Shown in pieces: positions 9,001-58,912 of a stretch of 64,000 nt of DNA. The notes under the pieces were generated by a model that was not told the DNA's origin, made no database searches, and was given only the letters and a program-made list of their open reading frames with translations. Position numbers and translations under genes: made by a program. Position 1 is the first letter of the stretch, and every line of letters begins with the position of its first letter. Location: the IMG/VR virus record IMGVR_UViG_3300027736_001324, positions 62,001-126,000 of that record. One strand, 5' to 3'.

Positions 9001-10800
9001 AACAGTTATCAATATCAAATTATTGATTTAGGTACTACTACTAATGCTGAATGGAATGACATTGCATTAACGTCCGGTGTTACATATGAAGTAGGTAGCA
9101 CGTTCACCGTGCTTGCAGCTTCAGCAGCAGCGGGAACCGGCACTGTGTTACTTACTAATTTAGGTGGTATCAGCACACTTGGTGAAGTTTATTTTGTTAG
9201 AGCATTATTAGATAGCACACATTTTACTATAGAAGATCAATATGGTAATATAATTGAACTTACTGATACCTCAGGTAATTCATTATATGCATACAGCGGA
9301 GGCTTAGTAGCAGTTAGAGTTATAACTGGAATTGATCACGGTTTAACAGAAAATTCATTAATTCGTATTGACGGTGTAGTTGGATCAACCCAGTTAAACA
9401 ACAATACATATTATGCTAGAATAATAAGTAATACTGAATTTGATTTGTATACCTATCCATACAATCCTGCATATGGAGCTATTAATTACCCGGTCGTTGC
9501 AATATCTGCATATATCTCAGGTGGATATGCATGGTTAGATCAATTGTTTACTATTGCTACTACTGTAACAATTGGAACAAATTCTACTAATAACAGAATT
9601 GCTGTACAAGACGGAACTAAATTAATACATGGAACTCCGGTATACTTTACTCAATTTGGCGCTACTCAAAATGAAGATATATTGGGTAATATTTTAGCAC
9701 AGCATGAATATTATGTGTATGAAATTACACCGGCAACAAGTGTAGATGATTTTGTAATAGGGTACCAGTATCAAATTTTAGAATTGGGTGATACTGACTG
9801 GAACTTTGTTGCAGGTACAGTAGACGTTGATTATGTTGTAGAGGATATAATTACAGTTGAGGATGTTGATTCAGGAACAACAGGCGTTGCAAGTAGTTTA
9901 CAAGAATTTACTATTAGCGAAACTCGCTATCCAAATGAATCAATTTTTGCAGTAACAACAGCTACAGGTGTAGTAAATGTTTCTCAATTCCAACAAATCA
10001 ATGTTGATAGATTGTGGGTAACTGTAAATGGTTTACGAGTTCCGGCGTCGTCATTGAGACTAAATGAATATAATAATTTAAGTATTTTGACAACTATTCA
10101 AACTGGCGATGTAGTTATTATAACTAGTATGATGCCAACAGCTACTCCAAATGAAGAAACTTATTTATTAAATGTAACTACAAGCAATCAGCCATCTGTA
10201 TATAGAGCAAATTCACAGACTAGAACTTGGTTAACTCACCCATTAGAATACACTGATACTTTGATTTATTTAAATGATGTAAGTCGTATAACCGATACTA
10301 TTGTTCAGGATGTAACGTGTCCAGTTGCTGTAGACGGGTTATATAATATTGGATTAACTTCTAATAAGAACGTAATATGTCATTTGACAGTTTATAACAA
10401 TACAACTTCTACCTTAGTGGACCCAGTAAATTATTCAACAATTGTTGTAGATACCGCTCCAATATTGCAAATTTCTGCTCAAGTTTCAGTTGGGGATTCA
10501 TTGACAATCACTTCAGTTGAAGGTAGATTATTATATGTCAATGGGGAGCAAATTGGATTCAGAGAATGTGATTTGACCAACAATACAGTCAGTGATTTGC
10601 AACGCGGAACAAACGGCACAGGTACACAGACTTATATTCCGTTATATTCTGAAGCATACGGATTGGTTCCAAATAATCGTATGACAGACGTACTATATTC
10701 TTCTGCGTGGAATTCTTATGTATACAATACAGTTGAGGGCGATCCGTTGCAGATTAGTGACACATTGGGAGCAGGTTTCTTAAGAACGGATAGAACTTAA
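1..10800 (+). CDS. Giant virion structural protein (baseplate/tail-associated), 5'-truncated by the window edge
   Basis: The frame is open from base 1, so the track start at 229 is internal. T/G/S/V-rich beta-strand composition; repeated 'FxGxxFGGIxxxxxYYV...FTIS' and 'AGSFVxGxxYTIxxxGxT...G.GTG' modules; beta-propeller-like 'S.DG.TW' repeats near 5.7-6.6 kb; lies upstream of tail-fibre genes. Confidence 0.75.
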   Translation, partial: TNAKDLDYGSQPYYGTALDFNDNRVTVGTPNFAPTTNANDTNGQVITYVSLSSEPDWAVFRSTSAIVDVNSLGPIQLFSASTNQTLENLDYFDPLQGKLLGAIQQNIDVISNVDPAGYNSPSYTQGNLVWGPEKLGMIWFNTNNTRFMNYHQNDVTYNSQWWGRVFPGSDVSVYSWVVSNVPPAQYPGPGVPFSPTDYSVQGVINAEGLVVPVYYFWARNTNTVFTRRDKTLADTTLQLYIANPQGTGISYFSPLLPNVFGLYNCFDYVNGNDTTLHIGYATANNDDVAHNQYSLIRANYADDFLPGVPGSGAAYQYHGAVGITEPTSLYNRMLDSMCGVDNFGAVVPNPLLPKLVQTGVLAKPRQGFFYDRFGALQNYLQYANEILAQYPITETRNAAFLSKTGTFYDTKNYWNYINWWATGYNNNTKSSLQVSIYADLSTLDVAAGTIVTVAANSAGNSETYIYNVDGTWTRIGLTNGTIEFSSYLWDYPSAKLGFGDNFFDTNLYDEYPSEETRNIVRALNEEIYTNELLIHRNKSLILLFEYIQSETVENQNYLPWLNKTSLMDVSHTIRELLPLEVFRSDNQDFLAGYINEVKPYHVVIKEFLFKYTKTDVFEGDITDFDIPSQFNTTVQQFISPELVYANPSGDNQFLPTDPIWQTAPYSQWFSNYGLSIGYRVENTVAGETNYPITKLASYVSLSSNSLYVDNVNGFPVTGSILIGTEEIAYSSIDLLTNQLLGLARGYNSTTIEQHIPGEQIYIDLPAVIVLNSGRGYTEPPRVTAYIDTTVYPAPRVVAQLEPIMSLDSVIGVKVLNPGEGYAVLPTIQIDPAFTITFNSTSVNVDNSTIEIEAPLLQTGDLLIYNIPAGSTKIGGLVDGQKYYVGVLETTPSTVIALYDTYFTLLNDHDRVPLTSQGSGTQTLKVGAVASCITSSIPTRENSITLRYDRTSYTSQVIEWEPSGYYGSFYAGSFNDSLRLSSSSISLEASSPPISSVLASAQGVGFSILDVENNQTLTWSSRTRDTIQTYDNTTLYPNAIRINPSTGGSSVDALLGSTLGFYVGMPVKFVGSIPAGSPIVSSTPIGVTPESTTIYYVKSLLKLPKIIDAGSFVFGKVYTIVSVGNTDFVAIGASANTVGVVFTATGTGSGTGTASDATLLEDTGFTISATVDTDGVPGATFSLTTATVGTAGLTLYVGELTNTAIMTVNYNGIRTVTGTSSTNNIITIPLNAIGENGTTGFYQGLPIFFTGNVFGGVVENDTYYVTTVIDLQNFTMSTINDPLVLTATATNASGYAITCNTTLGLSVNDPIIFTGTTFGGIVEGTIYYVRELFSGNSTFSISASVNGSAVVLTTDSGSCTVTSQVDTVVLTTSTGSMTLNMGLPVSPGQVNGQQFTLYKTSGEYTSVSGTVSNLIERNITATLATVNRVCLTTNSGGITNIYTNMDFDVASNIGGLTTSGGPYTVTGTGTTSITVTATFSNNRLRCTDTDILYEGMPIYFSGTSLGGVSLDEVYYVLDIVNSTDFTISESPAGSEFDTLGDSGSMTGTGEPYLTVADTLSDATGLVTLTQSVGTTPTFNVSYILGGYQAVVATAGTGYAETNIITILGTAIGGTTPTNNLSLQVSAVNSSGGILGTIASGAPAGATEQYYVKVYSETQLELYENSNLTVAVSGLNFPYTGITTTTATVATASNNRFTVGSSAGFNLNDSVVFTGTVFGGVTLGETYYILAKPTSTTVTISTSIGGTVFDITADDTGSMSMAKAGDFALLPEPFFFDASVVKYNNRLYQCIISNNDQDFIFGKWELLQAGNYNLNALDRIVGYYKPNKTNTEAWAQYINMPGDDLTQLVSGITYPNATYLGNPFAPADEFTLDTILTDRPFYATGLDLKAVIWNGTTYISAADTTSYTSLNVSANSVTWAITQLSNSTINVTDMIFNGLYYVMTCNNSATPVLTSTDGINWSTITSYTPYGLTATTIPLSLNSIVYQTSLPYVAVGNTILICADVINLAAWTEVYRLPTTATFNGNPVAVTNVLNGVTYAHTTGYTGFVAVGLGQTPSGSNLVNVALIYTSVDGITWNQVTFNATTYGFNAIASNGQTIAAVGDHGIIYTSTNAITWFAQSSGTVRNLTNIIWDSVNNVFVALGENGVILTSDIFGITWTARTSGTTETLESVVWNNDDSEYVVVGLNNTVLRSTDLTTWTSTSNFVTPEAVYTVQGDAFTAGYGPEEMVPGIVSDTITMITNTRPGSNWDETIYQHVGYGVVSLELTPTSGNQVEYSFVNATIVPTQVSVFVIDYATGLSTTLYEGIDYSVDWINKIVTLDTPINYITPGTDTLRIDVYEVGNGDQLVKANTETDPIRLNSTTGFHEIYVNANYTAGIYQGSGVIRPTTEPLKAIALLTNGTSDAITCDSVENFVLNSPITFSGTVFGNIVEDQVYYVKSISGATNRITISLTVNGDTFALADATGSMTAIIQVGTGIVWTPPAMYHNGSPLTLGTTSIVTRTKSTTNTITTNSTGTMVPNQSIVFSNTMFGDVIVPQQVYYVKTVYDANEFTVSETQGGDTLELSDATGGAIFITNDYAIGLADNGVTASIMLAADYDVTIDYLAYTLMGETLPIQYGYTLPIVETFVGDAVGTASFTLTNYLGGTNPTNAIVEINGVRQNNSAYTINDINNTILFYSPPSDGDVISVTTYNLTDRQYFNTQYNITSSGAGVASITISNTTATAIPFDYSVLAGSFVIGQLYTIQSLNDDAYPTPGANTNFTLIGASSNTVGVTFTATGPGTGTGSAIIAGNGFDATQQTVLQTAGSFVLTNVYSIVTLGTTTNTQWNTIAGTSGVTYSVGSTFTCANIGTGLGNGTAYAYSSGLYSQSLYYLTLASGTTSSLIINSSIVFENVIGGIVAGQTYYITEILNSTDFVISSQVGGLPYEVTTDSGAMTSVVGELTVSNIVGIDNSITTPVAITVSGTIAADDSVICSTTSNLTVGQDIIFKAAIIGVTEGIVNSYQYQIIDLGTTTNAEWNDIALTSGVTYEVGSTFTVLAASAAAGTGTVLLTNLGGISTLGEVYFVRALLDSTHFTIEDQYGNIIELTDTSGNSLYAYSGGLVAVRVITGIDHGLTENSLIRIDGVVGSTQLNNNTYYARIISNTEFDLYTYPYNPAYGAINYPVVAISAYISGGYAWLDQLFTIATTVTIGTNSTNNRIAVQDGTKLIHGTPVYFTQFGATQNEDILGNILAQHEYYVYEITPATSVDDFVIGYQYQILELGDTDWNFVAGTVDVDYVVEDIITVEDVDSGTTGVASSLQEFTISETRYPNESIFAVTTATGVVNVSQFQQINVDRLWVTVNGLRVPASSLRLNEYNNLSILTTIQTGDVVIITSMMPTATPNEETYLLNVTTSNQPSVYRANSQTRTWLTHPLEYTDTLIYLNDVSRITDTIVQDVTCPVAVDGLYNIGLTSNKNVICHLTVYNNTTSTLVDPVNYSTIVVDTAPILQISAQVSVGDSLTITSVEGRLLYVNGEQIGFRECDLTNNTVSDLQRGTNGTGTQTYIPLYSEAYGLVPNNRMTDVLYSSAWNSYVYNTVEGDPLQISDTLGAGFLRTDRT

Positions 10801-32594: not shown

Positions 32595-35500
32595 ATGCTA
32601 AGAGATGTATTTTATTACGGCGCCAAACCCAACGTTCACCCAAGAGAAAAATTTGCAACTTCACTAGAAGATGCTAGACAACAATCTACCACAGAACATT
32701 TTTGGATAATAAACGAATATTGTGATTATCGTAATTTTGATTGGGACTTTGATTTTGAATTTCTACCCGACGAAGATGTATGGGCAGAAGAACATAACAA
32801 CGTATGGCCTAGTATACATCAAAAAGATAGCGGCACATGGCTATGCACATCAAACCCAACCGAGATAATTATATATCGGGCTGACGTTGAACCAGTAAAA
32901 CGTAAAAACGAAACACACAAAAATTGGGTACTACTAGATTTAGTAGATGAAACTAAATTTGATTTTAGTTGGCATCCAGACCCAACTGACCCTCCCTATA
33001 TCTATACATGGGGATGTAAATATTTCCCAGTAGAATTGCAAGCCTGCTTAGAATATCATGTTCCGGGTGCAACAACCGTGAAGTACATGGATAGTATTGT
33101 AGAGTTGTTGCCACATACAGATCGATGGGTTGAAGTACAGAATATTGACAAATCATTATTTGATATGTCATGGAGACCTAGTCCATTGGATCCTCCTATG
33201 AATTATGTTTGGGGTAACAAACACATTGATGGCAAATTGAAATCTACACTAGAGTATCATATGCCCGGTGCGACTGATACAAAGTATATGTCTTATCCTT
33301 TGCCAGTATTACCTGAGTGGGATAGATGGCAAATCCATGACGAGATAGATAAAACTAGTTTTGATTTTAGTTGGAGACCAGATCCAAGAGAGCCGGCTTA
33401 TATATACCAATGGGGTAATAAACATTATAGTAGTGAATTATCTCCTACTATTTCCTATACTGCCCCGGGAGCAACTGAAGTTAAACATATGTCACAAGAT
33501 GTTAATCTAGCAGTAAGTAAAAATTGGGTTTTCTATCACGCAGTAAATAAAACTAAATTTGATTTGACATGGAGACCTGATCCAACTAGCCCACCTTATA
33601 TCTATGCATGGGGAAATAAATATGATCCAGCAGAAGTTAAACCTACGCTAGAATATATTGTACCCGGGGCAACCGAATACAAGTATATGGACGTTGTTGA
33701 TTTAGAGCCAGAATGGGATAGATGGAAAGAACATATTTTTGTTGATCATTCTAAATTTGATTTTAGTTGGAGACCAGATCCTAATCTACATGAGCCACCT
33801 TATATCTATGTGTGGGGCAACAAGTATGATCCGGCAGAAGTTAAGCCTACGCTAGAATATCATGTGCCCGGAGCAACTGAATATAAGTATATGAACATTG
33901 TTGATTTAGAGCCAGAATGGGATAGATGGCAAGAAATTCAACCAGTAGATAAAAGTAAGTTTGATTTTAGTTGGAGACCTGATCCTAACTTACACGAACC
34001 ACCTTATATCTATGTGTGGGGTAATAAACATATATCAGCAGAACTTAAATCAACAATAGAATATCATGTGCCGGGCGCTACAGAACGCAAGTACATGAGT
34101 CAGTTAGTAGAAGTGTTGCCTGAATTCAATCGGTGGAAAGAAATACAATCTATTGATAGAAACAAGTTTGATTTAACATGGAGACCAGATCCAAGAGAAC
34201 CAGCATATATTTATGTATGGGGAAATAAACATATACCGGGTGAACTGAAATCAACAATAGAATATCAATGTGACGGGGCTACTGAATATAAGTATATGGA
34301 TGAACTTGTTGAAGTATTACCTGAACAAGAACACTGGAAAGTTACGCAAGAAGTAAAAAACTTTGACTTTACCTGGAGACCTGATCCACGTGAACCTGCA
34401 TACATTTACACTTGGGGTAATAAACATATAGCAGCAGAACTTAAACCCACAATAGAGTATTATTGTGAGGGTGCAACAGAACACAAGTATATGGGTGAAG
34501 TTGATGTTGTTCCTGAAATGGATCGTTGGAATATTGTACAAGAAATTTCTAACACATTTGATTTGTCATGGAGACCTGACCCACGTGAACCTGCATATAT
34601 CTATACATGGGGTAACAAATATATACCCGGAGATATAAAACCTACACTTGAATATCATTGTGAGGGTGCTACCGAACGAAAGTATATGGGTGATGTTGAT
34701 GTATTGCCTGAGTTAGACAAGTGGAAAGAAATTCAATCAATAGATAAAACTAAGTTTGATATGTCGTGGAGACCAGACCCGCGTGAACCGGCATACATTT
34801 ACGTGTGGGGTAATAAACACGTTGAAGCTGAATTAAAGTCAACTATTGAATATCATTGTCCTGATGCAACCGAACGCAAGTACATGGGTGATGTTGAAGT
34901 ATTACCTGAATTAGATAAATGGAATATTGTACAACAAGTAGAAAACTTTGATTTTACATGGAGACCAGATCCAAGAGAACCTGCATATATCTACACATGG
35001 GGTAACAAGCATGTTAGTGCTGAATTGAAACCGACACTTGAATATCATTGTCCTGATGCAACTGAACGAAAATACATGGGTGATGTTGAAGTGTTACCGG
35101 AGTTTGACAAATGGAAAGAAATACAGCCAATAGATAACACTAAGTTTGATATGTCGTGGAGACCTGATCCACGTGAACCTGCATATATTTACACATGGGG
35201 TAATAAACATGTTAGTGCTGAGTTTAAGCCAACACTTGAATATTATTGTGAAGGTGCAACAGAGCGCAAGTACATGGGTGATGTTGAAGTTTTACCTGAG
35301 TTTGACAAATGGAATATTGTACAACAAGTAGAAAACTTTGATTTTACATGGAGACCAGATCCAAGAGAACCTGCATATATTTATGTATGGGGTAACAAAT
35401 GGATACAAGGAGATTTAAAATCTACACTTGAGTATCACTGTGAAGGGGCAACTGAATTCAAGTATATGAAAGAATTATTAGATGTTGCACCAATACACGA

Positions 35501-38500
35501 CCACTGGAACATTATACAAAAAGTAGAAAACTTTGATTTTAGTTGGAGACCTGATCCACGTGAACCTGCATATATTTATATATGGGGTAATAAACATATA
35601 GCAGGTGAATTAAAACCAACACTTGAATTTCATTGCCAAGGTGCTATTGAACGTAAATTTATGGGTACTGCTGAAGTAGCACCAGAATGGGATAGATATC
35701 AAATATTAATACCAGTAGATAAAACTAGCTTTGACTTCACGTGGAGACCAGATCCCAGAGAACCTGAATTTATATATGTATGGGGTAATCAATCTAACAT
35801 TGCAGAAAAAGAACCTACTATTGAATATCATTGTCCTGGCGCTACTGAACGAAAATACATGAATGACAATGTGGCTAAGACATTACCTGTAGTTGAAAAT
35901 TGGAAGATATTAATTTCAGTAGAAAACTTTGATTTTAGTTGGAGACCTGATCCTAATAGCCCTCCCTACATCTATATATTTGGTAATCAATGGCATGATG
36001 CTATGACAGAGCCTACATTAGAATATCATGTAGAGGGCGCTGCCGAAAAGAAATATGTCACAGAGATTGTTCCTACTGCAACAAAGACTCAGGAGTATTG
36101 GAAAACTCTTATTCCAATCGAATCATTTGATTATAGCTGGAGACCCAATCCACATTCAACCCCTTACATATATGTATTTGGTAATCAATGGCATGATAGC
36201 ATAACTGAACCCACAATAGAATATCATTGTCCTGGCGCAACGGATAAGAAATACATTACTGATGTAATTGCATTAGCCAAATCAACAGCAACAGACAATC
36301 ATTGGAAACGATTAATACCGATTGAATCATTTGATTATAGCTGGAGACCTGATCCTAATAGTCCTCCTTATATCTATGTGTTTGGTAATAAATGGAACGA
36401 TGCTGCAACTGAACCATCGGTTGAATATTATGTTGACGGCGCAACTGAACACAAATATGTATCTGACCCTGTTGCTATTCCTAAAGCAGAGATACAATAC
36501 TGGGCTATCAATAATAATGATGACTTAGAAACATTTGATTTTACATGGAGACCCAATCCACATAGTCCATCACAAATATATCAATGGCAAGATAATGGAC
36601 CAAGGTATACGGTTCCTGGCGCAACAGATGTGGTGTTAATGGAACACACTGGAAAGACAAAGAAAGTAATCGTTAATCGTTACAAGATTAAAACAACATT
36701 GGAAGATTTAATTAACGAACATCCGGAAGAAGTATTCTGGGCTATCAACCCTGATTTGAATTATGATAAGTTTGACTTTAGTTGGCGACCCAACGAAGAA
36801 AACTTTAGACATATAAATGTATTTGGCAATGAGTATAGCAAAAATACACAAACGTATTATATTAATAGTCCAATGTATATGCTTGGAAACAAAGAATATA
36901 ATTATGTAGAGGATCAATCAGTGCAGGTTGATAGTAATCTAAGTATGTTCTTTATTGATAAAAGTAATAAGGAAAGTACAAGTAGATTTAATGAATTAAA
37001 ATTACGCTATCCACAATTACAAAAGACAAGATATCTTAATAGTTGGGTAGATACAATCAATCGTTGTATTACTAAATCAGAAACTAAATTGTTCTGGGTA
37101 CTGAATAGTGAATTAGATTATAGTGAGTTTGATTTTGACTTCTATCCTAGCCCATGGCAAATGAATATGATACATGTGTTTGGAACACAATGGAGTCATT
37201 GGGGTAACACCTACATGGTTAATAAAGAAACCTTTGCAGAAGATACAAAGTATGTAAAGATTATTGAACATCTATCTAACTTGAATTTTGTAAAACAAAG
37301 AAAAGCAAAAGCAACAAATGTATTGTATGACATTGTTTATATTGACCATGGTAATAAAGATTTGTCTGATATTAATAACTTAATCATCAAGTATGAAAAG
37401 AGTTATTTGACTACTTTTAGAAACATGTTAGATAAACTTTCAGTAAAGAAAGAACATTATGTTTGGGTAGCTAGTACTATATGTGATTACACAAACTTTG
37501 ACTTTACCTATATATGTGATCCGTTTGCCAAAGAGCAATTACATGTATTTCCAAGTGATAAGCAGAAGTTTGGTGATACGTTTTTAATTGATGTGAATAG
37601 ATTACGTGAATTAGTAGATGATATGACTACATTGGAAGACTACAATAAGATTAACTTTAATCAAAGTCAAAGAGTAAAAAGATTAGAAGCACCTGTGATT
37701 ATTACTGAGGAAGATACTCATGTATCTAGTATTAACACGGAGTTTGATTTTCCGTATGCTGTATTCACCACAGTTGATAATAAAGACATTAAAGTATTGG
37801 ATAATGAACCAATGAACATATGGAGTTATGAGACTAAAAATATCATAATAACCAGTGAAGGTGGAACAAGAATTATTGTTCCCAAAGAAGCAAGAAAATA
37901 TATTAAAAACGAATTATATGATTATCCATATATAATGCCCAATGACAAATTAGCAAAGTCTAATCCGTTGGACATTGTTTTCTTTAGTAACGGTGAAGCC
38001 TGTGCTGAGGCAAATTATAAACATTTGCTTAAACTAACTGAAAAGCTACCCAACAATGTATTAAGAATTGACGGTATAAATGGTCGTGTAAAAAGCCAAC
38101 ATGCTGCTGCTGAAAGTAGTGCTACCCCATGGTACTTCTTAGTCAATGCTAAACTGAAAGTAGATTCAAAGTTTAATTTTAATTGGCAACCGGACAGATT
38201 GCAGATACCTAAGCATTATATTTTCCATGCCACCAACCCTGTAAACGGATTAGTATATGGTCACCAAGCTATCGTTGCTAACAACAAGAAACTTACCTTA
38301 GCAAACTTTGGAACTGGATTAGACTTTACTATGGACAGTGAGCATGAAGTTGTTGCTATTAATAGCGGCATTGGTATGTATAATAGTAGTGAGTGGGATA
38401 CATGGCGTACTGCATTCCGCGAATGTATTAAACTTAAATTATCCAAAACTATGGAAAATAAAGAACGTCTAGATGTATGGTTAAACGTTGGCCTTGGTGA

Positions 38501-38639
38501 GTTTGCCCAATATAGTATACAAGGTGCCAAAGATGCAGTAGAATACTATTATGAAGTTGAAAGTGACTTTAAAAAATTGCGTTTAAGTTATGATTGGGAT
38601 TGGTTAAGAACATTCTATGAGACTAAATACAAACTATGA
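32595..38639 (+). CDS. 2014-aa protein with ~19 tandem ~65-aa W-R-P-D-P repeats and terminal GT-like domains
   Basis: Repeat unit FD(F/L/M)(S/T)WRPDPREPAYIY.WGNK....KPT(L/I)EYH..GATE.KYM; the C-terminal domain resembles ORF 16029-16979. Confidence 0.8.
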   Translation: MLRDVFYYGAKPNVHPREKFATSLEDARQQSTTEHFWIINEYCDYRNFDWDFDFEFLPDEDVWAEEHNNVWPSIHQKDSGTWLCTSNPTEIIIYRADVEPVKRKNETHKNWVLLDLVDETKFDFSWHPDPTDPPYIYTWGCKYFPVELQACLEYHVPGATTVKYMDSIVELLPHTDRWVEVQNIDKSLFDMSWRPSPLDPPMNYVWGNKHIDGKLKSTLEYHMPGATDTKYMSYPLPVLPEWDRWQIHDEIDKTSFDFSWRPDPREPAYIYQWGNKHYSSELSPTISYTAPGATEVKHMSQDVNLAVSKNWVFYHAVNKTKFDLTWRPDPTSPPYIYAWGNKYDPAEVKPTLEYIVPGATEYKYMDVVDLEPEWDRWKEHIFVDHSKFDFSWRPDPNLHEPPYIYVWGNKYDPAEVKPTLEYHVPGATEYKYMNIVDLEPEWDRWQEIQPVDKSKFDFSWRPDPNLHEPPYIYVWGNKHISAELKSTIEYHVPGATERKYMSQLVEVLPEFNRWKEIQSIDRNKFDLTWRPDPREPAYIYVWGNKHIPGELKSTIEYQCDGATEYKYMDELVEVLPEQEHWKVTQEVKNFDFTWRPDPREPAYIYTWGNKHIAAELKPTIEYYCEGATEHKYMGEVDVVPEMDRWNIVQEISNTFDLSWRPDPREPAYIYTWGNKYIPGDIKPTLEYHCEGATERKYMGDVDVLPELDKWKEIQSIDKTKFDMSWRPDPREPAYIYVWGNKHVEAELKSTIEYHCPDATERKYMGDVEVLPELDKWNIVQQVENFDFTWRPDPREPAYIYTWGNKHVSAELKPTLEYHCPDATERKYMGDVEVLPEFDKWKEIQPIDNTKFDMSWRPDPREPAYIYTWGNKHVSAEFKPTLEYYCEGATERKYMGDVEVLPEFDKWNIVQQVENFDFTWRPDPREPAYIYVWGNKWIQGDLKSTLEYHCEGATEFKYMKELLDVAPIHDHWNIIQKVENFDFSWRPDPREPAYIYIWGNKHIAGELKPTLEFHCQGAIERKFMGTAEVAPEWDRYQILIPVDKTSFDFTWRPDPREPEFIYVWGNQSNIAEKEPTIEYHCPGATERKYMNDNVAKTLPVVENWKILISVENFDFSWRPDPNSPPYIYIFGNQWHDAMTEPTLEYHVEGAAEKKYVTEIVPTATKTQEYWKTLIPIESFDYSWRPNPHSTPYIYVFGNQWHDSITEPTIEYHCPGATDKKYITDVIALAKSTATDNHWKRLIPIESFDYSWRPDPNSPPYIYVFGNKWNDAATEPSVEYYVDGATEHKYVSDPVAIPKAEIQYWAINNNDDLETFDFTWRPNPHSPSQIYQWQDNGPRYTVPGATDVVLMEHTGKTKKVIVNRYKIKTTLEDLINEHPEEVFWAINPDLNYDKFDFSWRPNEENFRHINVFGNEYSKNTQTYYINSPMYMLGNKEYNYVEDQSVQVDSNLSMFFIDKSNKESTSRFNELKLRYPQLQKTRYLNSWVDTINRCITKSETKLFWVLNSELDYSEFDFDFYPSPWQMNMIHVFGTQWSHWGNTYMVNKETFAEDTKYVKIIEHLSNLNFVKQRKAKATNVLYDIVYIDHGNKDLSDINNLIIKYEKSYLTTFRNMLDKLSVKKEHYVWVASTICDYTNFDFTYICDPFAKEQLHVFPSDKQKFGDTFLIDVNRLRELVDDMTTLEDYNKINFNQSQRVKRLEAPVIITEEDTHVSSINTEFDFPYAVFTTVDNKDIKVLDNEPMNIWSYETKNIIITSEGGTRIIVPKEARKYIKNELYDYPYIMPNDKLAKSNPLDIVFFSNGEACAEANYKHLLKLTEKLPNNVLRIDGINGRVKSQHAAAESSATPWYFLVNAKLKVDSKFNFNWQPDRLQIPKHYIFHATNPVNGLVYGHQAIVANNKKLTLANFGTGLDFTMDSEHEVVAINSGIGMYNSSEWDTWRTAFRECIKLKLSKTMENKERLDVWLNVGLGEFAQYSIQGAKDAVEYYYEVESDFKKLRLSYDWDWLRTFYETKYKL
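32960..36620 (+). repeat. Intragenic tandem repeat array, period ~190-205 bp
   Basis: 'tggagacc' anchors recur about every 195 bp; 34917-34990 and 35307-35380 are identical over 74 bp. Confidence 0.9.
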
Positions 38640-39360: not shown

Positions 39361-39507
39361 ATGTTTATTGGGTTAATGGGTGTTGATAATGATGGCAAAA
39401 CCATGTATACTCCAAATGGTAATAAGATATGGTTCACATTGCCATGGGGACTAGCGTGGAAATTACAAGAGATACAACATTGGATCGCTAAGAAAACTTG
39501 GCGATAA
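39361..39507 (+). CDS. Small 48-aa hypothetical protein (MFIGLMGVD...)
   Basis: Strong AAGGAG RBS. Confidence 0.6.
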   Translation: MFIGLMGVDNDGKTMYTPNGNKIWFTLPWGLAWKLQEIQHWIAKKTWR

Positions 39508-39514
39508 ATAGTAG

Positions 39515-39818
39515 TTATTGCTGTATGAAGCAAAGAGAAAAGTGTTCTGGACGCGGGTTCGACTCCCGCCAGGTCCACCATAAACATAATGTCTACTGGT
39601 GAATGAGATAACAATGCTCATAATAAAAGTCCAAACAGTATGTTTATGATGGGCCTGACATTGGTTTCGACAGGGCAACAAGTAAATGAGTGGACAGCAC
39701 AAGAGCAACCTTGTAAAAAGAAGAAAAACCGTAAACGCAAACGACGAATTGTTCGCATTAGCAGCCTAAACGCTGCTTAGGGTTTCGGTAGGTTTCCTCG
39801 TAACAGAATAACCTACCA
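39515..39818 (+). ncRNA. ssrA: Circularly permuted (two-piece) tmRNA: acceptor piece ~39515-39580, intervening segment 39581-39650, coding piece from 39651, tag ANDELFALAA (39737-39769)
   Basis: The T-arm and CAGGTCC-ACCA end lie upstream of the 5' end GGGCCTG...TTCGAC. The acceptor stem pairs with a G3-U70 alanine determinant. The tag ORF is gca aac gac gaa ttg ttc gca tta gca gcc taa. Confidence 0.92.
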
Positions 39819-39832
39819 TTAAGTTAATACGT

Positions 39833-40504
39833 ATGAACAAAGAAATTATTTACGATAGTCCATTGATTATAAAATATCACAATTTTTTAACTTATGATGA
39901 GTGTAAATCCATAATAGATGCAATTGATGCAAAAGAATATGATAAAGCAACCGTATATTCCGTACCGGCTAGAGATTATTATAAGTCTGAGGGTAGAACT
40001 AATTCGACCTATGTAGACCGTACTAAAAAATTATTGCAACTAGAGATAAAAATTACTGATTTTTTTAATACTGAATTAAATGCAATCAATGGTAAAAATA
40101 CTCAGTATAATCCGGAAACACCACTTGCAATACAAAAATATGGAGTTGGCGAACAATACAAGGTACATGTAGATTATTTTAATAACACAGAAAAAGTTCA
40201 TAATAATGATAGACTTGCAACCTGCATTTTATACCTTAATGATGATTTTGAAGGTGGACACACATTTTTTAAACAGCTTAATATTAGTATTAAACCTAAG
40301 TCAGGAATGATATTATTTTTTAAGTATGATAGTAAATATTCACACGAAAATTATAAAACGATACATGCAGGTTTGCCAGTGGAGTCAGGAACCAAGTATA
40401 TTATATCAGCGTTCATGCGTGAAGGAAGTATACCGGACTGGAAACCCACTGCATCGGATAAAATAATTAAATTAAATCATGTTTACCCACATATAACTGC
40501 ATAA
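39833..40504 (+). CDS. 2OG-Fe(II) oxygenase, prolyl 4-hydroxylase-like
   Basis: 'HVD' (HxD), 'R.AT..LYLND.FEGG.T.F', 'HAGLPV..G.K'. Confidence 0.85.
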   Translation: MNKEIIYDSPLIIKYHNFLTYDECKSIIDAIDAKEYDKATVYSVPARDYYKSEGRTNSTYVDRTKKLLQLEIKITDFFNTELNAINGKNTQYNPETPLAIQKYGVGEQYKVHVDYFNNTEKVHNNDRLATCILYLNDDFEGGHTFFKQLNISIKPKSGMILFFKYDSKYSHENYKTIHAGLPVESGTKYIISAFMREGSIPDWKPTASDKIIKLNHVYPHITA

Positions 40505-40650: not shown

Positions 40651-41535
40651 ATGAAGAAAATCGCACTTGCGACAATTTTAGCCGCTGCATCTCTTGCAGC
40701 ATCAGCACAAGTAGCCGTTTACGGTAAAATGCGTGTGTATGAAGAATCAGTAACAGTTGGATCTGCGGCAGCAGTAACAGCACTAACCAACGATACAAGT
40801 CGTTTAGGTTTTAAAGGTACTGAAGCATTAGGTGGCGGACTATCTGCTAACTTCACAATTGAAACTGGTATCGGTGCAGATGCTCCAGCAGCATCAACAT
40901 TGGGCGACAGAACTATGATTGTAGGTTTGTCAAACAGTTTAGGTTCAGTTAATGTTGGTCGTGACAAGCACACAATCGCACGTACACTTGATAACTATGA
41001 CGCAATGGGTAATGTATACGGTTCTAGTACCGCAGTCATTCACGCTGCTCAAGGTTCACGTTTCAGTAATGCGTTGTTTGTTTCAGCTACTCCAATGGCT
41101 GGTTTAACTGTTAACTACATCAATAGCAATAGCGAAGTAGCAGGCGTTAATAACCCACAAGCTGCTAGTATTGAATTTACTCGTGGTCCAATCAGTGCTA
41201 CTGTAGCAAATTTTGATAACGGTACAACAAGTACTTCAACAATCTATGGTGCAAAAGTTAAAGTTGAAAAGACTGGTACTACAGTTTTCGCTACATACTC
41301 TGATGACAAAGTTTCAGGTGTAACTACAAGTGGTAAAAGTATTGGTGTTAATCACCCAGTTACTGGTTCATTGATGGCACTTGCTAGCTATGGTGAGAAC
41401 AATACTACTAAAGCATTAGACTTAGGCGCAAGCTATAGTTTAAGCAAGCGTACAACAGTTCACGCTCGTTACATCAAAGAAGATGCAGCAGCAACAACTA
41501 CTAAGTACGCATTGGGTATGGAACACAATTTCTAA
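40651..41535 (+). CDS. Outer-membrane porin (betaproteobacterial general porin type)
   Basis: Signal peptide; 'SRLGFKGTEALGGGLSA.F.IE'; 'YSLSKRT'; C-terminal 'GMEHNF'. Confidence 0.9.
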   Translation: MKKIALATILAAASLAASAQVAVYGKMRVYEESVTVGSAAAVTALTNDTSRLGFKGTEALGGGLSANFTIETGIGADAPAASTLGDRTMIVGLSNSLGSVNVGRDKHTIARTLDNYDAMGNVYGSSTAVIHAAQGSRFSNALFVSATPMAGLTVNYINSNSEVAGVNNPQAASIEFTRGPISATVANFDNGTTSTSTIYGAKVKVEKTGTTVFATYSDDKVSGVTTSGKSIGVNHPVTGSLMALASYGENNTTKALDLGASYSLSKRTTVHARYIKEDAAATTTKYALGMEHNF

Positions 41536-42734: not shown

Positions 42735-43496
42735 ATGAAAACTTACCGATCAATATTTGTATCCGATGTTCATTTGGGTACAAAAGATAGTCAAGCCGAA
42801 AAATTAAATAACTTTCTGAAACACAATTCATGTGATACATTATACTTAATAGGAGATATAATCGATGCCTGGAGAATTCAACAAAACAAATGGAGATGGA
42901 AACAAAGCCACACTAATGTGGTCCGTCGTGTTCTCGGTCATGCTAAACGCGGCACTCGTGTTGTTTATATTGCAGGTAATCACGATGAATTTTTAAGACC
43001 TATGATACCATATGGGTTCAGTTTTGGACTCATTGAGATACATAATCAAATAGAACATATAGGTGCAGATGGTAATCATTATCTTGTAGTACACGGAGAT
43101 ATGTTTGACGGTATAACTAGATTGGCACCTTGGATAGCATTTTTAGGAGACAAAGCATATGATGTCATTTTATCAGTTAATAGCAAATTCAATTGGCTAC
43201 GCCATCGCATGGGTTTTGGGTATTTTAGTCTTAGTAAATATCTCAAAGCAAGAGTAAAGAAAGCAGTAGACTTCATATTCCACTTTGAAAAAAATCTCGC
43301 AACCTATTGTAAAAAACGTGGGTTTGATGGTGTTATCTGTGGACACATTCACCATGCAGAGATTAAAGACATTGATGGTATTAAATACATGAATGATGGT
43401 GACTGGGTTGAATCCTGTACAGCACTTGTAGAACATTGGGACGGTCGTTGGGAAATAGTTACTTGGACTAAGGAGAAGGACAATGAAATTAAGTGA
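42735..43496 (+). CDS. plcP: PlcP-like metallophosphoesterase (intracellular phospholipase C; family often annotated UDP-2,3-diacylglucosamine diphosphatase)
   Basis: 'YRSIFVSDVHLG', 'LYLIGDIID.W', 'W.W.QSH..VV', 'GNHDEFLR', 'HGD.FD', 'CGHIH', 'YMNDGDWVESCTALVE'. Confidence 0.75.
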   Translation: MKTYRSIFVSDVHLGTKDSQAEKLNNFLKHNSCDTLYLIGDIIDAWRIQQNKWRWKQSHTNVVRRVLGHAKRGTRVVYIAGNHDEFLRPMIPYGFSFGLIEIHNQIEHIGADGNHYLVVHGDMFDGITRLAPWIAFLGDKAYDVILSVNSKFNWLRHRMGFGYFSLSKYLKARVKKAVDFIFHFEKNLATYCKKRGFDGVICGHIHHAEIKDIDGIKYMNDGDWVESCTALVEHWDGRWEIVTWTKEKDNEIK

Positions 43497-57018: not shown

Positions 57019-57053
57019 AACAATAAATACTCACTACATGTGAGTATTTTTTT

Positions 57054-57332
57054 ATGTTCGATCCATTTAAACAAGCAAAAATTCAAAACGGTTATGCCAA
57101 ACTCAGAGGCATTAAACTCCCTGAGAAGGATATGACATTAGATGAACTAAAACAATTGAGTGGGTCTGGACAAGTCACTGGTGAATATTCATATACACTA
57201 TTACATGAATTAGCGCAAAAGAAACAACAATATATGCGTGAGAATAATATCAAGCCAGGTGACAAAGAATGGTTTAGAGTTATGTTTGCTAAAACACATC
57301 TTACAGGTGAAGATCCGTTTTCTAAAAACTAG
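57054..57332 (+). CDS. Hypothetical late protein
   Basis: 'ELKQLSG' and 'MRENNIKPG..EWF' motifs; directly upstream of terminase. Confidence 0.6.
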   Translation: MFDPFKQAKIQNGYAKLRGIKLPEKDMTLDELKQLSGSGQVTGEYSYTLLHELAQKKQQYMRENNIKPGDKEWFRVMFAKTHLTGEDPFSKN

Positions 57333-57355: not shown

Positions 57356-58912
57356 ATGGCAACCAATAATGCAGGACCTTCGTTAGTAAAGAATCCCTAT
57401 ACAAAGACGAAATTTAAGAATGATAAGGAATTACAGGACTTTATAAAGTGCTGTGACCCAGACACAGGTTATCTATACTTCATGGATAACTTCTTTATGA
57501 TACAACACCCTACCATGGGCAGCTTAGTATATCATCCATACGGATATCAAAAACGATTAATAGAAACTTATCATAACTATCGCTATAGTATTAGCTTGAT
57601 GCCACGACAGTCAGGTAAATCAACAAGCGCAGCCGGATACTTACTCTGGTATGCCATGTTCAAACCAGACAGTACGATTCTTATCGCAGCACATAAGTAC
57701 ACGGGCGCACAAGAGATCATGCAGCGTGTTCGTTACGCATATGAAAACTGTCCAGACTATATCAAAGCAGGTGTAACAACATATAACAAAGGCTCATTGG
57801 ACTTTGAGAATGGTAGTCGTATTGTAAGTGCAACTACAACTGAAAACACAGGTCGTGGTATGAGTATTACACTACTATACCTTGACGAGTTTGCGTTCGT
57901 TAGACCAAGTATCGCTAAAGAATTCTGGACAGCTATTACTCCAACATTAAGTACTGGTGGTAAAGCTATTATCACAAGTACACCAAACAGTGACGAAGAT
58001 CAGTTTGCCTTCATCTGGAAAGGTGCTAACAAAACTGAAGATGAATTTGGTAACACAACTGAATTAGGTATCAATGGCTTTAGAGCATATAGAGCAGAGT
58101 GGCATGAACAACCAGGTAGAGATCAGAAGTGGGCTGATGAAATGAAAGCACAGCTTGGTGAGGATCGTTTCAACCGAGAGATTGGTTGCGAATTCATTAT
58201 CGCTGATGAAACACTTATTAATCCTAATACATTATTAATGTTAGAAGGAATAGAACCAGTTAGTCGTATGGGACAAGTTCGTTGGTATCAGAAGCCAAAA
58301 AAGGGCAGTATCTATACAGTATCATTAGATCCAAGTCTTGGTACAGGTAGTGATCCAGCGGCAATACAAATCTTTGAAGCAAATACTGTTACACAGATTG
58401 GTGAGTGGAAACACAACAAAACTGATATCCCAACACAGATTAAACTTATTGCACAAATAAACAAATACATAGTTGAATGTACAGGTGAACCAAACAATTT
58501 ATATTATTCTGTAGAGAATAACAGTATCGGTGAGGCCTCATTAGTGTCATTAAACGAATATGGAGAGAACAATATCCCCGGAACATTCATTAGCGAACCG
58601 GGCAAGAAGCGTAAGGGCTTTAATACTACAAACAAGAGTAAATTAACCGCTTGCGCCAAGTTTAAGACATTACTAGAAAGCAAGAAACTAACCATTAATA
58701 GTCGTAGTCTTATCAGCGAGTTGAAAGCGTTTGTAGCACATGCGGGTAGTTATGCTGCCAAGATCGGTGATACAGATGATTTAATTATGGCCAGCTTATT
58801 AAATGTCAGAATGATTCAAGAATTAGGGTCATATCACTTTGAATTAGATAGTTATGTCAAGGACCACGAGGAATTTATTGCACCCTTGCCCTTCTTTGCC
58901 GTGCTAAGTTGA
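57356..58912 (+). CDS. Terminase large subunit (T4 gp17-like)
   Basis: Walker A 'PRQSGKS', 'GRG.S', Walker B 'LLYLDEFAF', 'ITSTPN', nuclease 'SLDP...DDLIMA'. Confidence 0.95.
   Translation: MATNNAGPSLVKNPYTKTKFKNDKELQDFIKCCDPDTGYLYFMDNFFMIQHPTMGSLVYHPYGYQKRLIETYHNYRYSISLMPRQSGKSTSAAGYLLWYAMFKPDSTILIAAHKYTGAQEIMQRVRYAYENCPDYIKAGVTTYNKGSLDFENGSRIVSATTTENTGRGMSITLLYLDEFAFVRPSIAKEFWTAITPTLSTGGKAIITSTPNSDEDQFAFIWKGANKTEDEFGNTTELGINGFRAYRAEWHEQPGRDQKWADEMKAQLGEDRFNREIGCEFIIADETLINPNTLLMLEGIEPVSRMGQVRWYQKPKKGSIYTVSLDPSLGTGSDPAAIQIFEANTVTQIGEWKHNKTDIPTQIKLIAQINKYIVECTGEPNNLYYSVENNSIGEASLVSLNEYGENNIPGTFISEPGKKRKGFNTTNKSKLTACAKFKTLLESKKLTINSRSLISELKAFVAHAGSYAAKIGDTDDLIMASLLNVRMIQELGSYHFELDSYVKDHEEFIAPLPFFAVLS

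What the first reader, a model, noticed from the sequence alone, without database searches (positions are those of the whole stretch)
39515..39818. Circularly permuted, two-piece tmRNA gene in a phage
Seen: the 3' acceptor end (GGTTCGACTCC...CAGGTCCACCA, ending 39580) precedes the 5' end (GGGCCTG at 39651). The 70-nt intervening segment is closed by cataaacata/tatgtttatg. Inter-piece pairings are tgttctg/cagggca and tgctgt/acagca, and the tag reads ANDELFALAA. Established: permuted ssrA genes occur in Alphaproteobacteria, some cyanobacteria and one betaproteobacterial lineage, and the tag resembles betaproteobacterial ANDERFALAA. The RNA looks very compact (~65 + ~170 nt), with pseudoknot 1 apparently reduced to a hairpin. 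A late motif TAAATA ends 5 nt before the predicted acceptor-piece start. Inference: the phage supplies its own ribosome-rescue RNA late in infection, possibly against host RNase-toxin defences.
Basis: partly seen in the sequence, partly recalled or inferred. Interest (0 to 1): 0.85.

Follow-up and report, generated by a model that had tools for sequence, protein, structure and literature searches.

The report
Phage-borne two-piece tmRNA gene
This is a real, complete, circularly permuted ribosome-rescue RNA (tmRNA) gene carried by a large aquatic phage, but phages with this kind of gene have already been described, so it is a good new example rather than a new kind of thing.

Summary
ARAGORN calls a permuted tmRNA with the tag ANDELFALAA. 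Rfam matches tmRNA_permuted (129 bits, threshold 47) and beta_tmRNA (112 bits, threshold 84). The CCA end at 39580, the 5' end at 39651, the 10-bp stem closing the 70-nt intervening segment and both inter-piece helices are all present. An alignment with 42 related viral-contig genes supports them through compensatory changes.

The window is part of a large myophage. Its large terminase is 48-50% identical to those of PA5oct, Phosso and Atu_ph07.

The ATAAATA motif upstream is a genuine regulatory motif of this phage. Ten of its 15 plus-strand copies are non-coding, and several lie just before the terminase and structural genes. Fifteen of the 43 aligned genes, this one included, carry TAAATA at the same distance.

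The kind is already known. Buchholz et al. 2022 counted 53 two-piece tmRNAs in phage genomes. Cultured phages Marzo and vB_Af_QDWS595 carry the same beta-type gene. I found more than 214 IMG/VR contigs with permuted tmRNAs.

Working trans-translation is the likely function. Late timing is plausible. The anti-toxin role is untested. Verdict: new member of a known kind, modest interest.

The parts
39504..39510 (+). ATAAATA promoter-like motif (T4-late-type, NATAAATA), about 6 nt upstream of the conserved A at 39517
   Evidence: Ten of 15 plus-strand copies in the window are non-coding, against 11% for same-composition 7-mers, P = 5e-7. TAAATA lies at the same spacing in 15 of the 43 aligned genes, this one included; 11 others have TTGACA-N17-TATAAT there instead.
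39517..39580 (+). Predicted acceptor piece (about 64 nt). It holds the P2 outer strand 39519-24, mid-P2 39530-31, P2a strand 39543-49, T arm 39553-57/39565-69 with loop UUCGACU, acceptor 3' strand 39570-76, discriminator A39577 and encoded CCA 39578-80.
   Evidence: Rfam alignments; covariation counts; A39517 and T39518 are nearly invariant in A1. The 5' end is inferred, not measured.
39581..39650 (+). Intervening segment (70 nt) removed on maturation. Its closing stem 39579-88/39639-48 stacks on the acceptor stem.
   Evidence: The stem covaries (for example 39584/39643: GC 21, GT 14, AT 7), while the interior is not conserved in sequence or length.
39651..39818 (+). Predicted coding piece (about 168 nt). 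It holds the acceptor 5' strand 39651-57 (G3 at 39653 pairs with U at 39574), GGUUUCGAC D-loop analogue 39663-71, P2a strand 39671-77, AGUA 39681-84, P2 outer strand 39694-99, the hairpin at the PK1 site 39700-13, the tag frame, the stop-codon hairpin 39760-77 and the 3' pseudoknot/hairpin 39780-39817.
   Evidence: The 3' end is inferred from the last conserved hairpin.
39737..39769 (+). Tag reading frame, GCA (resume codon) to TAA, encoding ANDELFALAA. UA lies at -5/-4 before the resume codon.
   Evidence: ARAGORN; sequence; GTAAAC before GCA is nearly invariant in A1.
39787..39817 (+). 3' hairpin of 8 bp (stem 2 of a probable H-type pseudoknot whose stem 1 is GGG 39780-82 with CCU 39796-98)
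   Evidence: Stem 2 shows many compensatory variants among relatives (GGTAGGTT/AACCTACC, GGTTGGTT/AACCAACC, GCCGGGTT/AACCCGGC and others). Stem 1 is invariant here, but is extended with compensatory TA/TA or CA/TG in the other architecture.

Best explanation
The region is a functional, phage-encoded, circularly permuted ssrA gene of the betaproteobacterial type.

Proposed mechanism:
1. A single precursor of about 300 nt is transcribed from roughly 39517, under a phage ATAAATA promoter of the T4-late type (inferred).
2. The precursor folds so that the 7-bp acceptor stem (39570-76 with 39651-57) is prolonged by the stem closing the 70-nt intervening segment.
3. RNase P cuts 5' of G39651, and 3' trimming stops at the encoded CCA (39580). 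This releases the segment (inferred from how two-piece tmRNAs mature in bacteria).
4. The result is a 64-nt acceptor piece and a 168-nt coding piece. They are held together by the acceptor stem, P2a (39543-49/39671-77), a 2-bp middle helix and the outer P2 helix (39519-24/39694-99) (shown by covariation).
5. The G3.U70 pair lets alanyl-tRNA synthetase charge the RNA.
6. With SmpB, presumably the host's, it enters stalled ribosomes. Translation resumes at GCA 39737, adds ANDELFALAA and stops at UAA.
7. The ribosome is freed and the peptide is marked for ClpXP-type proteolysis (inferred from the family).

The likely benefit is to keep ribosomes available while messages are being broken down during infection, probably in the late phase.
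For: - Detectors: ARAGORN tmRNA* with the tag; RF04321 at 129 bits and RF01850 at 112 bits, both full length.
- Covariation in 43 sequences. All 7 acceptor pairs are kept in 43/43 sequences, with G.U invariant and three pairs switching type (for example GC 31 / CG 12). The T arm pair 39554/39568 shows CG 24 / GC 11 / TA 7. Outer P2 shows CG 27 / TA 16 and GC 35 / AT 8. RNAalifold predicts 40 pairs, 21 of them with compensatory changes.
- The minimum-energy fold of the precursor gives the same architecture, z = -3.4.
- Phage context: terminase, structural, baseplate-like, gp32-like, thymidylate synthase, CobS-like and PstS genes, nearly all on one strand.
- The gene sits at the same place in independent assemblies: L245, L247, L147, L069, L097, L175.
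- More than 214 IMG/VR contigs carry permuted tmRNAs.
- The promoter motif is supported statistically and comparatively.
Against: - Nothing here shows expression, processing, alanylation or tagging.
- No SmpB was found among the ORFs tested: 40 against PHROGs and 20 against Pfam. The window is only part of the genome, so dependence on host SmpB is assumed.
- The host is unknown, so compatibility with its SmpB, AlaRS and proteases cannot be judged.
- No late sigma factor (gp55-like) was seen in the window, so 'late' rests on the motif's resemblance to T4 and on its position before the terminase and structural genes.
- The PK1 site is only a hairpin, and there is no clear intrinsic terminator after 39817.
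Confidence: 0.85

Rival explanations
1. The gene is a recently captured host ssrA that rides along as a passenger, or is a leftover of integration at the host ssrA (an attP-like fragment). It has no role for the phage.
For: ssrA is a common integration site, and fragments of it occur in prophages (PMC9004378, PMC4383910). IMG/VR contigs can include host flanks.
Against: - The gene is complete, with both pieces, the tag and CCA.
- It is flanked on both sides by co-oriented phage genes, and no integrase was found among the ORFs tested.
- It is kept at the same locus in diverged relatives, with compensatory changes that preserve the helices.
- It has a phage-type promoter motif.
- A 30-mer of the acceptor piece is shared by 29 of 214 viral loci and is absent from all 185,579 bacterial species genomes scanned.
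- The 29 bacterial beta-type genes retrieved align with it only over 36-54 nt stretches.
Confidence: 0.04
2. The RNA is made but acts against the host system rather than as a plain rescue RNA. It might compete for SmpB or for stalled ribosomes, or it might redirect tagged proteins to a fate that suits the phage, through a tag that differs from the host's.
For: - A phage tRNA-like-domain-only molecule (DS6A) inhibits tmRNA in E. coli (PMC4131195, PMC11915505).
- Tags in viral contigs are very diverse: 105 distinct tags in 212 calls, including tags of 23-33 residues.
- Close relatives of this gene differ in the tag: ANDELFALAA, ANDEIFALAA, ANDSQFALAA, ANDSQYLLAANA.
- Cultured Stenotrophomonas phages carry this permuted type although, from my memory only, their hosts have a one-piece gene.
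Against: The tag here is a canonical proteolysis tag ending in ALAA. All elements needed for normal function are kept under purifying selection. Nothing in the sequence points to a defect.
Confidence: 0.1
3. The permuted order is an assembly artefact or a chimera of two tmRNA halves.
For: None found.
Against: The same order and the same junctions occur in independent assemblies from different samples and pipelines (JGI 3300023184, JGI 3300043504, IMG/VR contigs). They also occur in complete genomes of cultured phages.
Confidence: 0.01

Closest known systems
Betaproteobacterial two-piece tmRNA (Rfam RF01850 beta_tmRNA; Sharkady and Williams 2004, cited from PMC9004378; examples retrieved here from Dechloromonas, Propionivibrio, Accumulibacter, Rhodocyclus and Oligella)
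   Same: - Acceptor piece before coding piece.
- The same tRNA-like domain, and P2a with UUCUGG/CAGGG.
- Tag of the ANDExFAxAA type.
- A hairpin where PK1 would be.
- One structured element after the tag.
- Full-length match above the family threshold.
   Different: - The intervening segment is 70 nt, against roughly 25-45 nt.
- CCA is fully encoded, while the Dechloromonas and Rhodocyclus examples encode only CC.
- The middle of P2 is a conserved purine-rich internal loop with AGUA opposite GAA, instead of the paired stretch of the model.
- There is no terminal G+C-rich hairpin.
- BLAST similarity to the 29 bacterial genes is limited to 36-54 nt stretches.
Phage-encoded two-piece tmRNAs: Methylophilales phage Melnitz, and the 53 two-piece genes found among 18,146 phage genomes (Buchholz et al. 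2022, PMC9004378)
   Same: A complete permuted ssrA in a large, lytic-looking aquatic myophage, sitting among auxiliary genes. The same proposed role of sustaining the hijacked translation machinery.
   Different: - Melnitz's gene is of the alphaproteobacterial type. It lies behind an early promoter and is associated with a glutamine riboswitch.
- This gene is beta-type and lies behind a late-type motif.
- Rfam found no riboswitch anywhere in the window.
tmRNA genes of cultured phages: Stenotrophomonas phage Marzo (Menderavirus; also hit in Moby, Mendera, YB07, IME-SM1) and Alcaligenes phage vB_Af_QDWS595
   Same: - Both are permuted by ARAGORN and match RF01850 (94.6 and 93.8 bits) and RF04321.
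- Marzo shares the acceptor-piece signature GTATGAAGC...GAAAGG with the window.
- Marzo's gene is annotated as tmRNA in GenBank.
   Different: - They lie in tRNA gene clusters, whereas the window has no tRNA gene.
- Their tags are VAANDDSYTVRIAA and ANDNVYAAAA.
- Similarity to the window is about 81% over 68 nt only.
One-piece phage tmRNAs (mycobacteriophage Bxz1 group, Bacillus phage G) and the tRNA-like-domain-only RNA of phage DS6A (PMC4131195)
   Same: Phage-borne members of the same RNA family. tmRNA and SmpB genes are also reported in huge phages (PMC7162821).
   Different: Those are standard, unpermuted genes, or lack the tag frame altogether.

Membership tests
tmRNA (ssrA) | tRNA-like domain: 7-bp acceptor stem with G3.U70, discriminator A, CCA end, 5-bp T stem and 7-nt T loop | tested here: met
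   Acceptor stem 39651-57/39570-76, with G39653.U39574 invariant in 43/43 sequences. A39577 and CCA 39578-80 are present. T arm is GCGGG-UUCGACU-CCCGC.
tmRNA (ssrA) | Internal tag reading frame without a start codon. It begins at an alanine resume codon, ends in a hydrophobic xLAA-type C-terminus, and has its stop codon in or next to a hairpin. | tested here: met
   GCA at 39737 to TAA at 39767-69 gives ANDELFALAA. The stop lies in the loop of GCAGC/GCUGC, 39761-65/39772-76.
tmRNA (ssrA) | Pseudoknot PK1 between P2 and the resume codon | tested here: not met
   Only a 4-bp hairpin is present (39700-03/39710-13), and it covaries as CAAG/CTTG, CATC/GATG and CGTC/GACG in A1. No segment downstream is complementary to its loop AGCAAC. 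The Rfam models also draw only a hairpin here, because they cannot encode pseudoknots, so this does not count against membership.
tmRNA (ssrA) | Works with SmpB; is alanylated; tags peptides | not testable with these tools
   No SmpB was found among the 20 ORFs tested against Pfam. The window is partial. Biochemistry is needed.
Permuted (two-piece) tmRNA, RF04321 / RF01850 | The gene order is 3' tRNA-like half, then intervening segment, then 5' tRNA-like half and coding part | tested here: met
   ARAGORN reports the permuted form. Both covariance models match over their full length, 1-213/213 and 1-331/331, above threshold.
Permuted (two-piece) tmRNA, RF04321 / RF01850 | The pieces are held together by P2 helices formed between the acceptor piece and the coding piece | tested here: met
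   Outer P2 39519-24/39694-99 shows compensatory changes (CG 27 / TA 16; GC 35 / AT 8). P2a 39543-49/39671-77 is paired in 43/43 sequences. The middle 2 bp 39530-31/39690-91 show 10 double changes. A competing hairpin within the acceptor piece is not compensated (TG in 14 sequences).
Permuted (two-piece) tmRNA, RF04321 / RF01850 | The precursor is cut into two stable RNAs | not testable with these tools
   The only support is structural. The intervening segment has a covarying closing stem that stacks on the acceptor stem, and its interior is variable.
T4-type late promoter (TATAAATA / NATAAATA read by a gp55-type factor) | Motif at a fixed short distance upstream of transcript starts, enriched before late (structural and packaging) genes | tested here: inconclusive
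   - The ATAAATA enrichment in non-coding DNA is strong (10 of 15, P = 5e-7).
- Copies lie just before the terminase (57344), structural genes (11590, 58920) and a baseplate-like gene (54936).
- Full TATAAATA is not enriched (2 copies against 12.9 expected).
- No gp55-like gene was seen in the window, and there are no transcript data.

The most novel reading that the evidence does not exclude
The gene belongs to a tmRNA lineage that is propagated among phages rather than repeatedly captured from hosts. Several observations point this way:
- A signature 30-mer is present in 29 viral contigs and in no bacterial species genome.
- Related genes occur in phages of hosts from different orders.
- The lineage has traits of its own: an encoded CCA, a conserved AGUA/GAA internal loop in P2 that fits a sarcin-ricin-like motif, and a hairpin instead of PK1.
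- Early-type and late-type promoters are exchanged at the same position.
- Tags change fast and are sometimes very long.

On this reading, phages have adapted trans-translation to their own programme, in timing and in the fate of tagged proteins, instead of merely topping up the host system.
Probability: 0.3. Interest if true: 0.55.

Novelty: new member of a known kind. Interest (0 to 1): 0.3.

Why it matters
Phage-encoded tmRNAs are annotated more and more often, but no one has shown what they do for the phage. This example is clean and complete. It has a well-defined precursor architecture and a phage-type promoter, and many natural variants have different tags and promoters. It is therefore a convenient entry point for testing whether phages use trans-translation to keep ribosomes free during infection, and when.

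It also shows that gene callers often lay spurious 'hypothetical proteins' over such genes. That matters for phage annotation.

It does not change what is known about the kinds of tmRNA that exist.

Tried and rejected
1. An alternative hairpin inside the acceptor piece (39519-22 with 39529-32) looked plausible, because AGCA resembles the coding-piece partner. The C-to-T change at 39521 is compensated in the coding piece (TA 16) but not in the acceptor piece (TG 14), so I rejected it.
2. I looked for a second stem that would make the 39700-13 hairpin into PK1. Nothing downstream is complementary to its loop in this gene. Some relatives with other loop sequences may form 3-5 pairs, which I left open.
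3. Host identification failed:
   - The porin next to the tmRNA has hundreds of metagenomic homologues at 55-97% identity, but none could be traced to a named organism.
   - An exact 30-mer of the acceptor piece is absent from the bacterial genome collection.
   - The second, degenerate scan only returned Rhodocyclaceae and Alcaligenaceae genes that are distant.
4. No SmpB, late sigma factor or integrase turned up among 40 ORFs tested against PHROGs and 20 against Pfam.
5. Megablast of 20 kb around the gene against 50,697 phage records found no close relative.
6. The sigma-70 consensus scan gave no convincing promoter directly upstream and no terminator after the gene.
7. The full T4 octamer TATAAATA is not enriched. 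Only the 7-mer is.

Full report
**What is there**

ARAGORN finds one tRNA-like gene in the whole 64-kb window. It is a permuted tmRNA (tmRNA*) at 39488-39860 on the plus strand, with the tag ANDELFALAA. Rfam at gathering thresholds returns two full-length matches and nothing else in the window:
- RF04321 tmRNA_permuted: 129.3 bits against a threshold of 47, E = 5e-25.
- RF01850 beta_tmRNA: 112.2 bits against a threshold of 84, E = 2e-33.

The precursor 39517-39818 folds by energy alone into the expected architecture, with z = -3.4 against 100 shuffles. Co-folding the two predicted pieces gives the same inter-piece helices.

**Anatomy**

- Acceptor piece, predicted 39517-39580:
  - outer P2 strand UGCUGU, 39519-24;
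  - a purine-rich stretch;
  - P2a strand UGUUCUG, 39543-49;
  - T arm GCGGG-UUCGACU-CCCGC, 39553-69;
  - acceptor 3' strand CAGGUCC, 39570-76;
  - discriminator A, then an encoded CCA ending at 39580.
- Intervening segment, 39581-39650 (70 nt): its closing 10-bp stem (39579-88 with 39639-48) stacks on the acceptor stem, leaving AU before G39651.
- Coding piece, predicted 39651-39818:
  - GGGCCUG, whose G3 pairs with U39574;
  - the GGUUUCGAC D-loop analogue;
  - CAGGGCA, 39671-77;
  - ACAGCA, 39694-99;
  - a 4-bp hairpin, 39700-13;
  - an A-rich linker;
  - GUAAAC followed by the tag frame, GCA 39737 to UAA 39769;
  - a hairpin holding the stop codon;
  - GGG 39780-82, then an 8-bp hairpin at 39787-39817 whose loop begins with UCCU.

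**Is it a phage?**

Yes. Nearly all ORFs lie on one strand. They include:
- a large terminase (57356-58909), 48-50% identical to those of Sinorhizobium phage Phosso, Pseudomonas phage PA5oct and Agrobacterium phage Atu_ph07, all 286-490 kb;
- virion structural and baseplate-like proteins, a gp32-like single-strand DNA-binding protein, thymidylate synthase and a CobS-like ATPase;
- typical aquatic auxiliary genes next to the tmRNA: a 2OG-Fe(II) oxygenase, a porin, PstS, a metallophosphoesterase, a glycosyltransferase and a carbamoyltransferase.

No record among 50,697 phage genomes is close at the DNA level. Related IMG/VR contigs reach 223 kb (L097).

**Comparative evidence**

The pattern was a T arm and CCA, then a gap of 45-106 nt, then the D-loop analogue. 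ARAGORN permuted tmRNAs in these contigs, with 105 different tags.

The nearest gene (L147) is 90% identical to the window's. Several contigs share flanking genes with the window: L069, L097, L124, L144, L175, L200 and L213. Contigs found through the neighbouring porin (L245 and L247, from other samples and assemblers) have the tmRNA at the same locus, with tags ANDEIFALAA and ANDSQYLLAANA. This disposes of an assembly artefact.

In an alignment of the window with 42 distinct relatives (A1), the helices are kept by compensatory changes:
- The acceptor stem is paired in 43/43 sequences at all seven positions. G.U is invariant, and three pairs switch type (AT 29 / TA 12 / CG 2; GC 32 / TA 7 / CG 4; GC 31 / CG 12).
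- The T stem pair 39554/39568 shows CG 24 / GC 11 / TA 7 / AT 1.
- Outer P2 shows CG 27 / TA 16 and GC 35 / AT 8.
- A 2-bp middle helix (39530-31 with 39690-91) shows ten double changes.
- The stem closing the intervening segment covaries, while its interior is unalignable.
- RNAalifold predicts 40 pairs, 21 of them with compensatory changes.

A rival hairpin inside the acceptor piece is not compensated, and I rejected it. The 3' hairpin shows many compensatory variants. The GGG/CCU pairing that would make it a pseudoknot is invariant in this architecture, and is extended with compensatory pairs in the other one.

**The PK1 site**

The hairpin at 39700-13 covaries (CAAG/CTTG, CATC/GATG, CGTC/GACG and others). 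Nothing downstream can pair with its loop AGCAAC.

Relatives fall into several versions of this region, including one with an extra hairpin of about 30 nt. The total size (64 + 168 nt) is close to that of the beta-type family model, so the gene is not unusually compact for its family.

**Promoter**

ATAAATA occurs 22 times in the window against 43 expected. However, 10 of its 15 plus-strand copies are non-coding, in the 8% of the window that is not coding. For the 20 other 7-mers of the same composition the figure is 11% (P = 5e-7).

Copies lie 4-23 nt before the starts of the terminase gene, two structural genes and a baseplate-like gene, and before the tmRNA at 39504-10.

In the 43 aligned genes:
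- 15, this one included, have TAAATA ending 6-9 nt before the first P2 base;
- 11 have TTGACA-N16-18-TANNNT ending at nearly the same place (8-9 nt before it in ten, 18 nt in one).

Both fix the transcript start near the conserved A39517. The acceptor piece would then begin with the primary transcript.

The resemblance to T4 late promoters, and the genes the motif precedes, make late expression a fair inference. But the full octamer TATAAATA is not enriched, and no gp55-like gene was seen in the window.

**Relation to bacteria**

A 30-mer of the acceptor piece is shared by 29 of the 214 viral loci and occurs in none of 185,579 bacterial and archaeal species genomes.

A degenerate scan for beta-type permuted genes returned 29 genomes, from Dechloromonas, Propionivibrio, Azonexus, Accumulibacter, Rhodocyclus, Sulfurisoma, Oligella and other Alcaligenaceae. 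Their tags are ANDERFALAA, ANDERFAIAA or ANDESYALAA. They align with the window only over stretches of 36-54 nt. They also differ in the length of the intervening segment, in the middle of P2 and in a terminal hairpin, and in Dechloromonas and Rhodocyclus the A of CCA is not encoded.

The host stays unknown: the neighbouring porin has hundreds of metagenomic homologues but no named source.

**What is already known**

- Phage tmRNAs have been listed since the Bxz1-group mycobacteriophages and phage G (PMC4131195).
- tmRNA and SmpB genes are reported in huge phages (PMC7162821).
- The current tmRNA database holds 79 unique bacteriophage sequences and 11,946 permuted ones (PMC11915505).
- Buchholz et al. 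described a two-piece ssrA in the OM43 myophage Melnitz. They counted 53 two-piece genes among 133 unique tmRNAs in 18,146 phage genomes, 50 of them from aquatic phages (PMC9004378).
- I also found that cultured phages carry this same beta-type permuted gene. It is annotated as tmRNA in Stenotrophomonas phage Marzo and is unannotated in Alcaligenes phage vB_Af_QDWS595. Both match RF01850 and RF04321.

**Verdict**

The observation and the identification are right. The gene is most likely a working two-piece tmRNA made from a phage promoter, probably late in infection.

The finding is a new member of a known kind. The most interesting open reading is that this is a tmRNA lineage maintained by phages, with its own structural and regulatory traits.

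Noticed in passing
IMG/VR loci L004, L013, L020, L049, L009, L025, L033, L067 and others: Many viral-contig permuted tmRNAs encode very long tags of 23-33 residues. Examples start ANADTFDFSAMSFTGNTV... or ANASTFEYFTVEGF..., and others end in FAV. Some of these contigs (such as L013) share the metallophosphoesterase gene with window 42737-43486. I do not know whether such tags occur in bacteria.
   Followed up: no
window 39537-39540 and 39681-39684: The middle of P2 is a purine-rich internal loop that is more conserved than the helices around it. GAAA on the acceptor piece and AGUA on the coding piece are each at least 90% conserved in 43 sequences. The covarying helices on either side are offset by exactly one nucleotide. 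This is what a bulged-G (sarcin-ricin / loop E) motif would give, with G39682 as the bulge. The bacterial beta-type consensus has no AGUA here.
   Followed up: partly
upstream of the tmRNA in A1 members: Related genes use either a TAAATA-type motif (15 of the 43 aligned genes, the window's included) or a textbook TTGACA-N17-TATAAT promoter (11), at nearly the same distance from the RNA start. This suggests that the timing of tmRNA expression has been switched repeatedly between phages.
   Followed up: partly
L168, L148, L163 (A1 columns about 130-150): The intervening segments of some relatives contain a T-arm-like GGTTCGATTCC or GGTTCGAATCC with flanking complementarity. This may be a tRNA-like element inside the excised segment.
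   Followed up: no
L249 (Stenotrophomonas phage Marzo) and L250 (Alcaligenes phage vB_Af_QDWS595): Cultured phages carry beta-type permuted tmRNAs inside tRNA clusters. Under the same match, several GenBank phage records annotate 'hypothetical protein' or nothing at all. From memory, Xanthomonadales hosts have one-piece tmRNA, so phage and host forms may differ. I did not test this.
   Followed up: partly
window 57023-57060: An ATAAATA motif is followed at once by the hairpin ctcactacatgtgag and a run of seven T. That is a promoter-like site abutting a terminator-like site, between a methyltransferase gene and the terminase gene.
   Followed up: no
window 229-10800 and 32595-38639: Two giant ORFs of 3523 and 2014 residues have no Pfam match (the second was tested). 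The second has internal repeats, judged from multiple overlapping BLAST matches to L069. A homologue of 1884 residues is called at the same position in L247, and one of about 1819 residues (cut by the locus end) in L245.
   Followed up: no
window 40651-41535: A Gram-negative porin gene (Porin_4) lies beside pstS in the phage. Its family of hundreds of metagenomic homologues (55-97% identity) includes members on contigs up to 155 kb, so it seems to be largely phage-borne.
   Followed up: partly
L245 8900-9162: The closest syntenic relative has GTGCGAA in the T loop where all others have GTTCGAN. It also has an insertion of about 14 nt in the acceptor piece after the outer P2 strand. This copy may be impaired or differently folded.
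   Followed up: no
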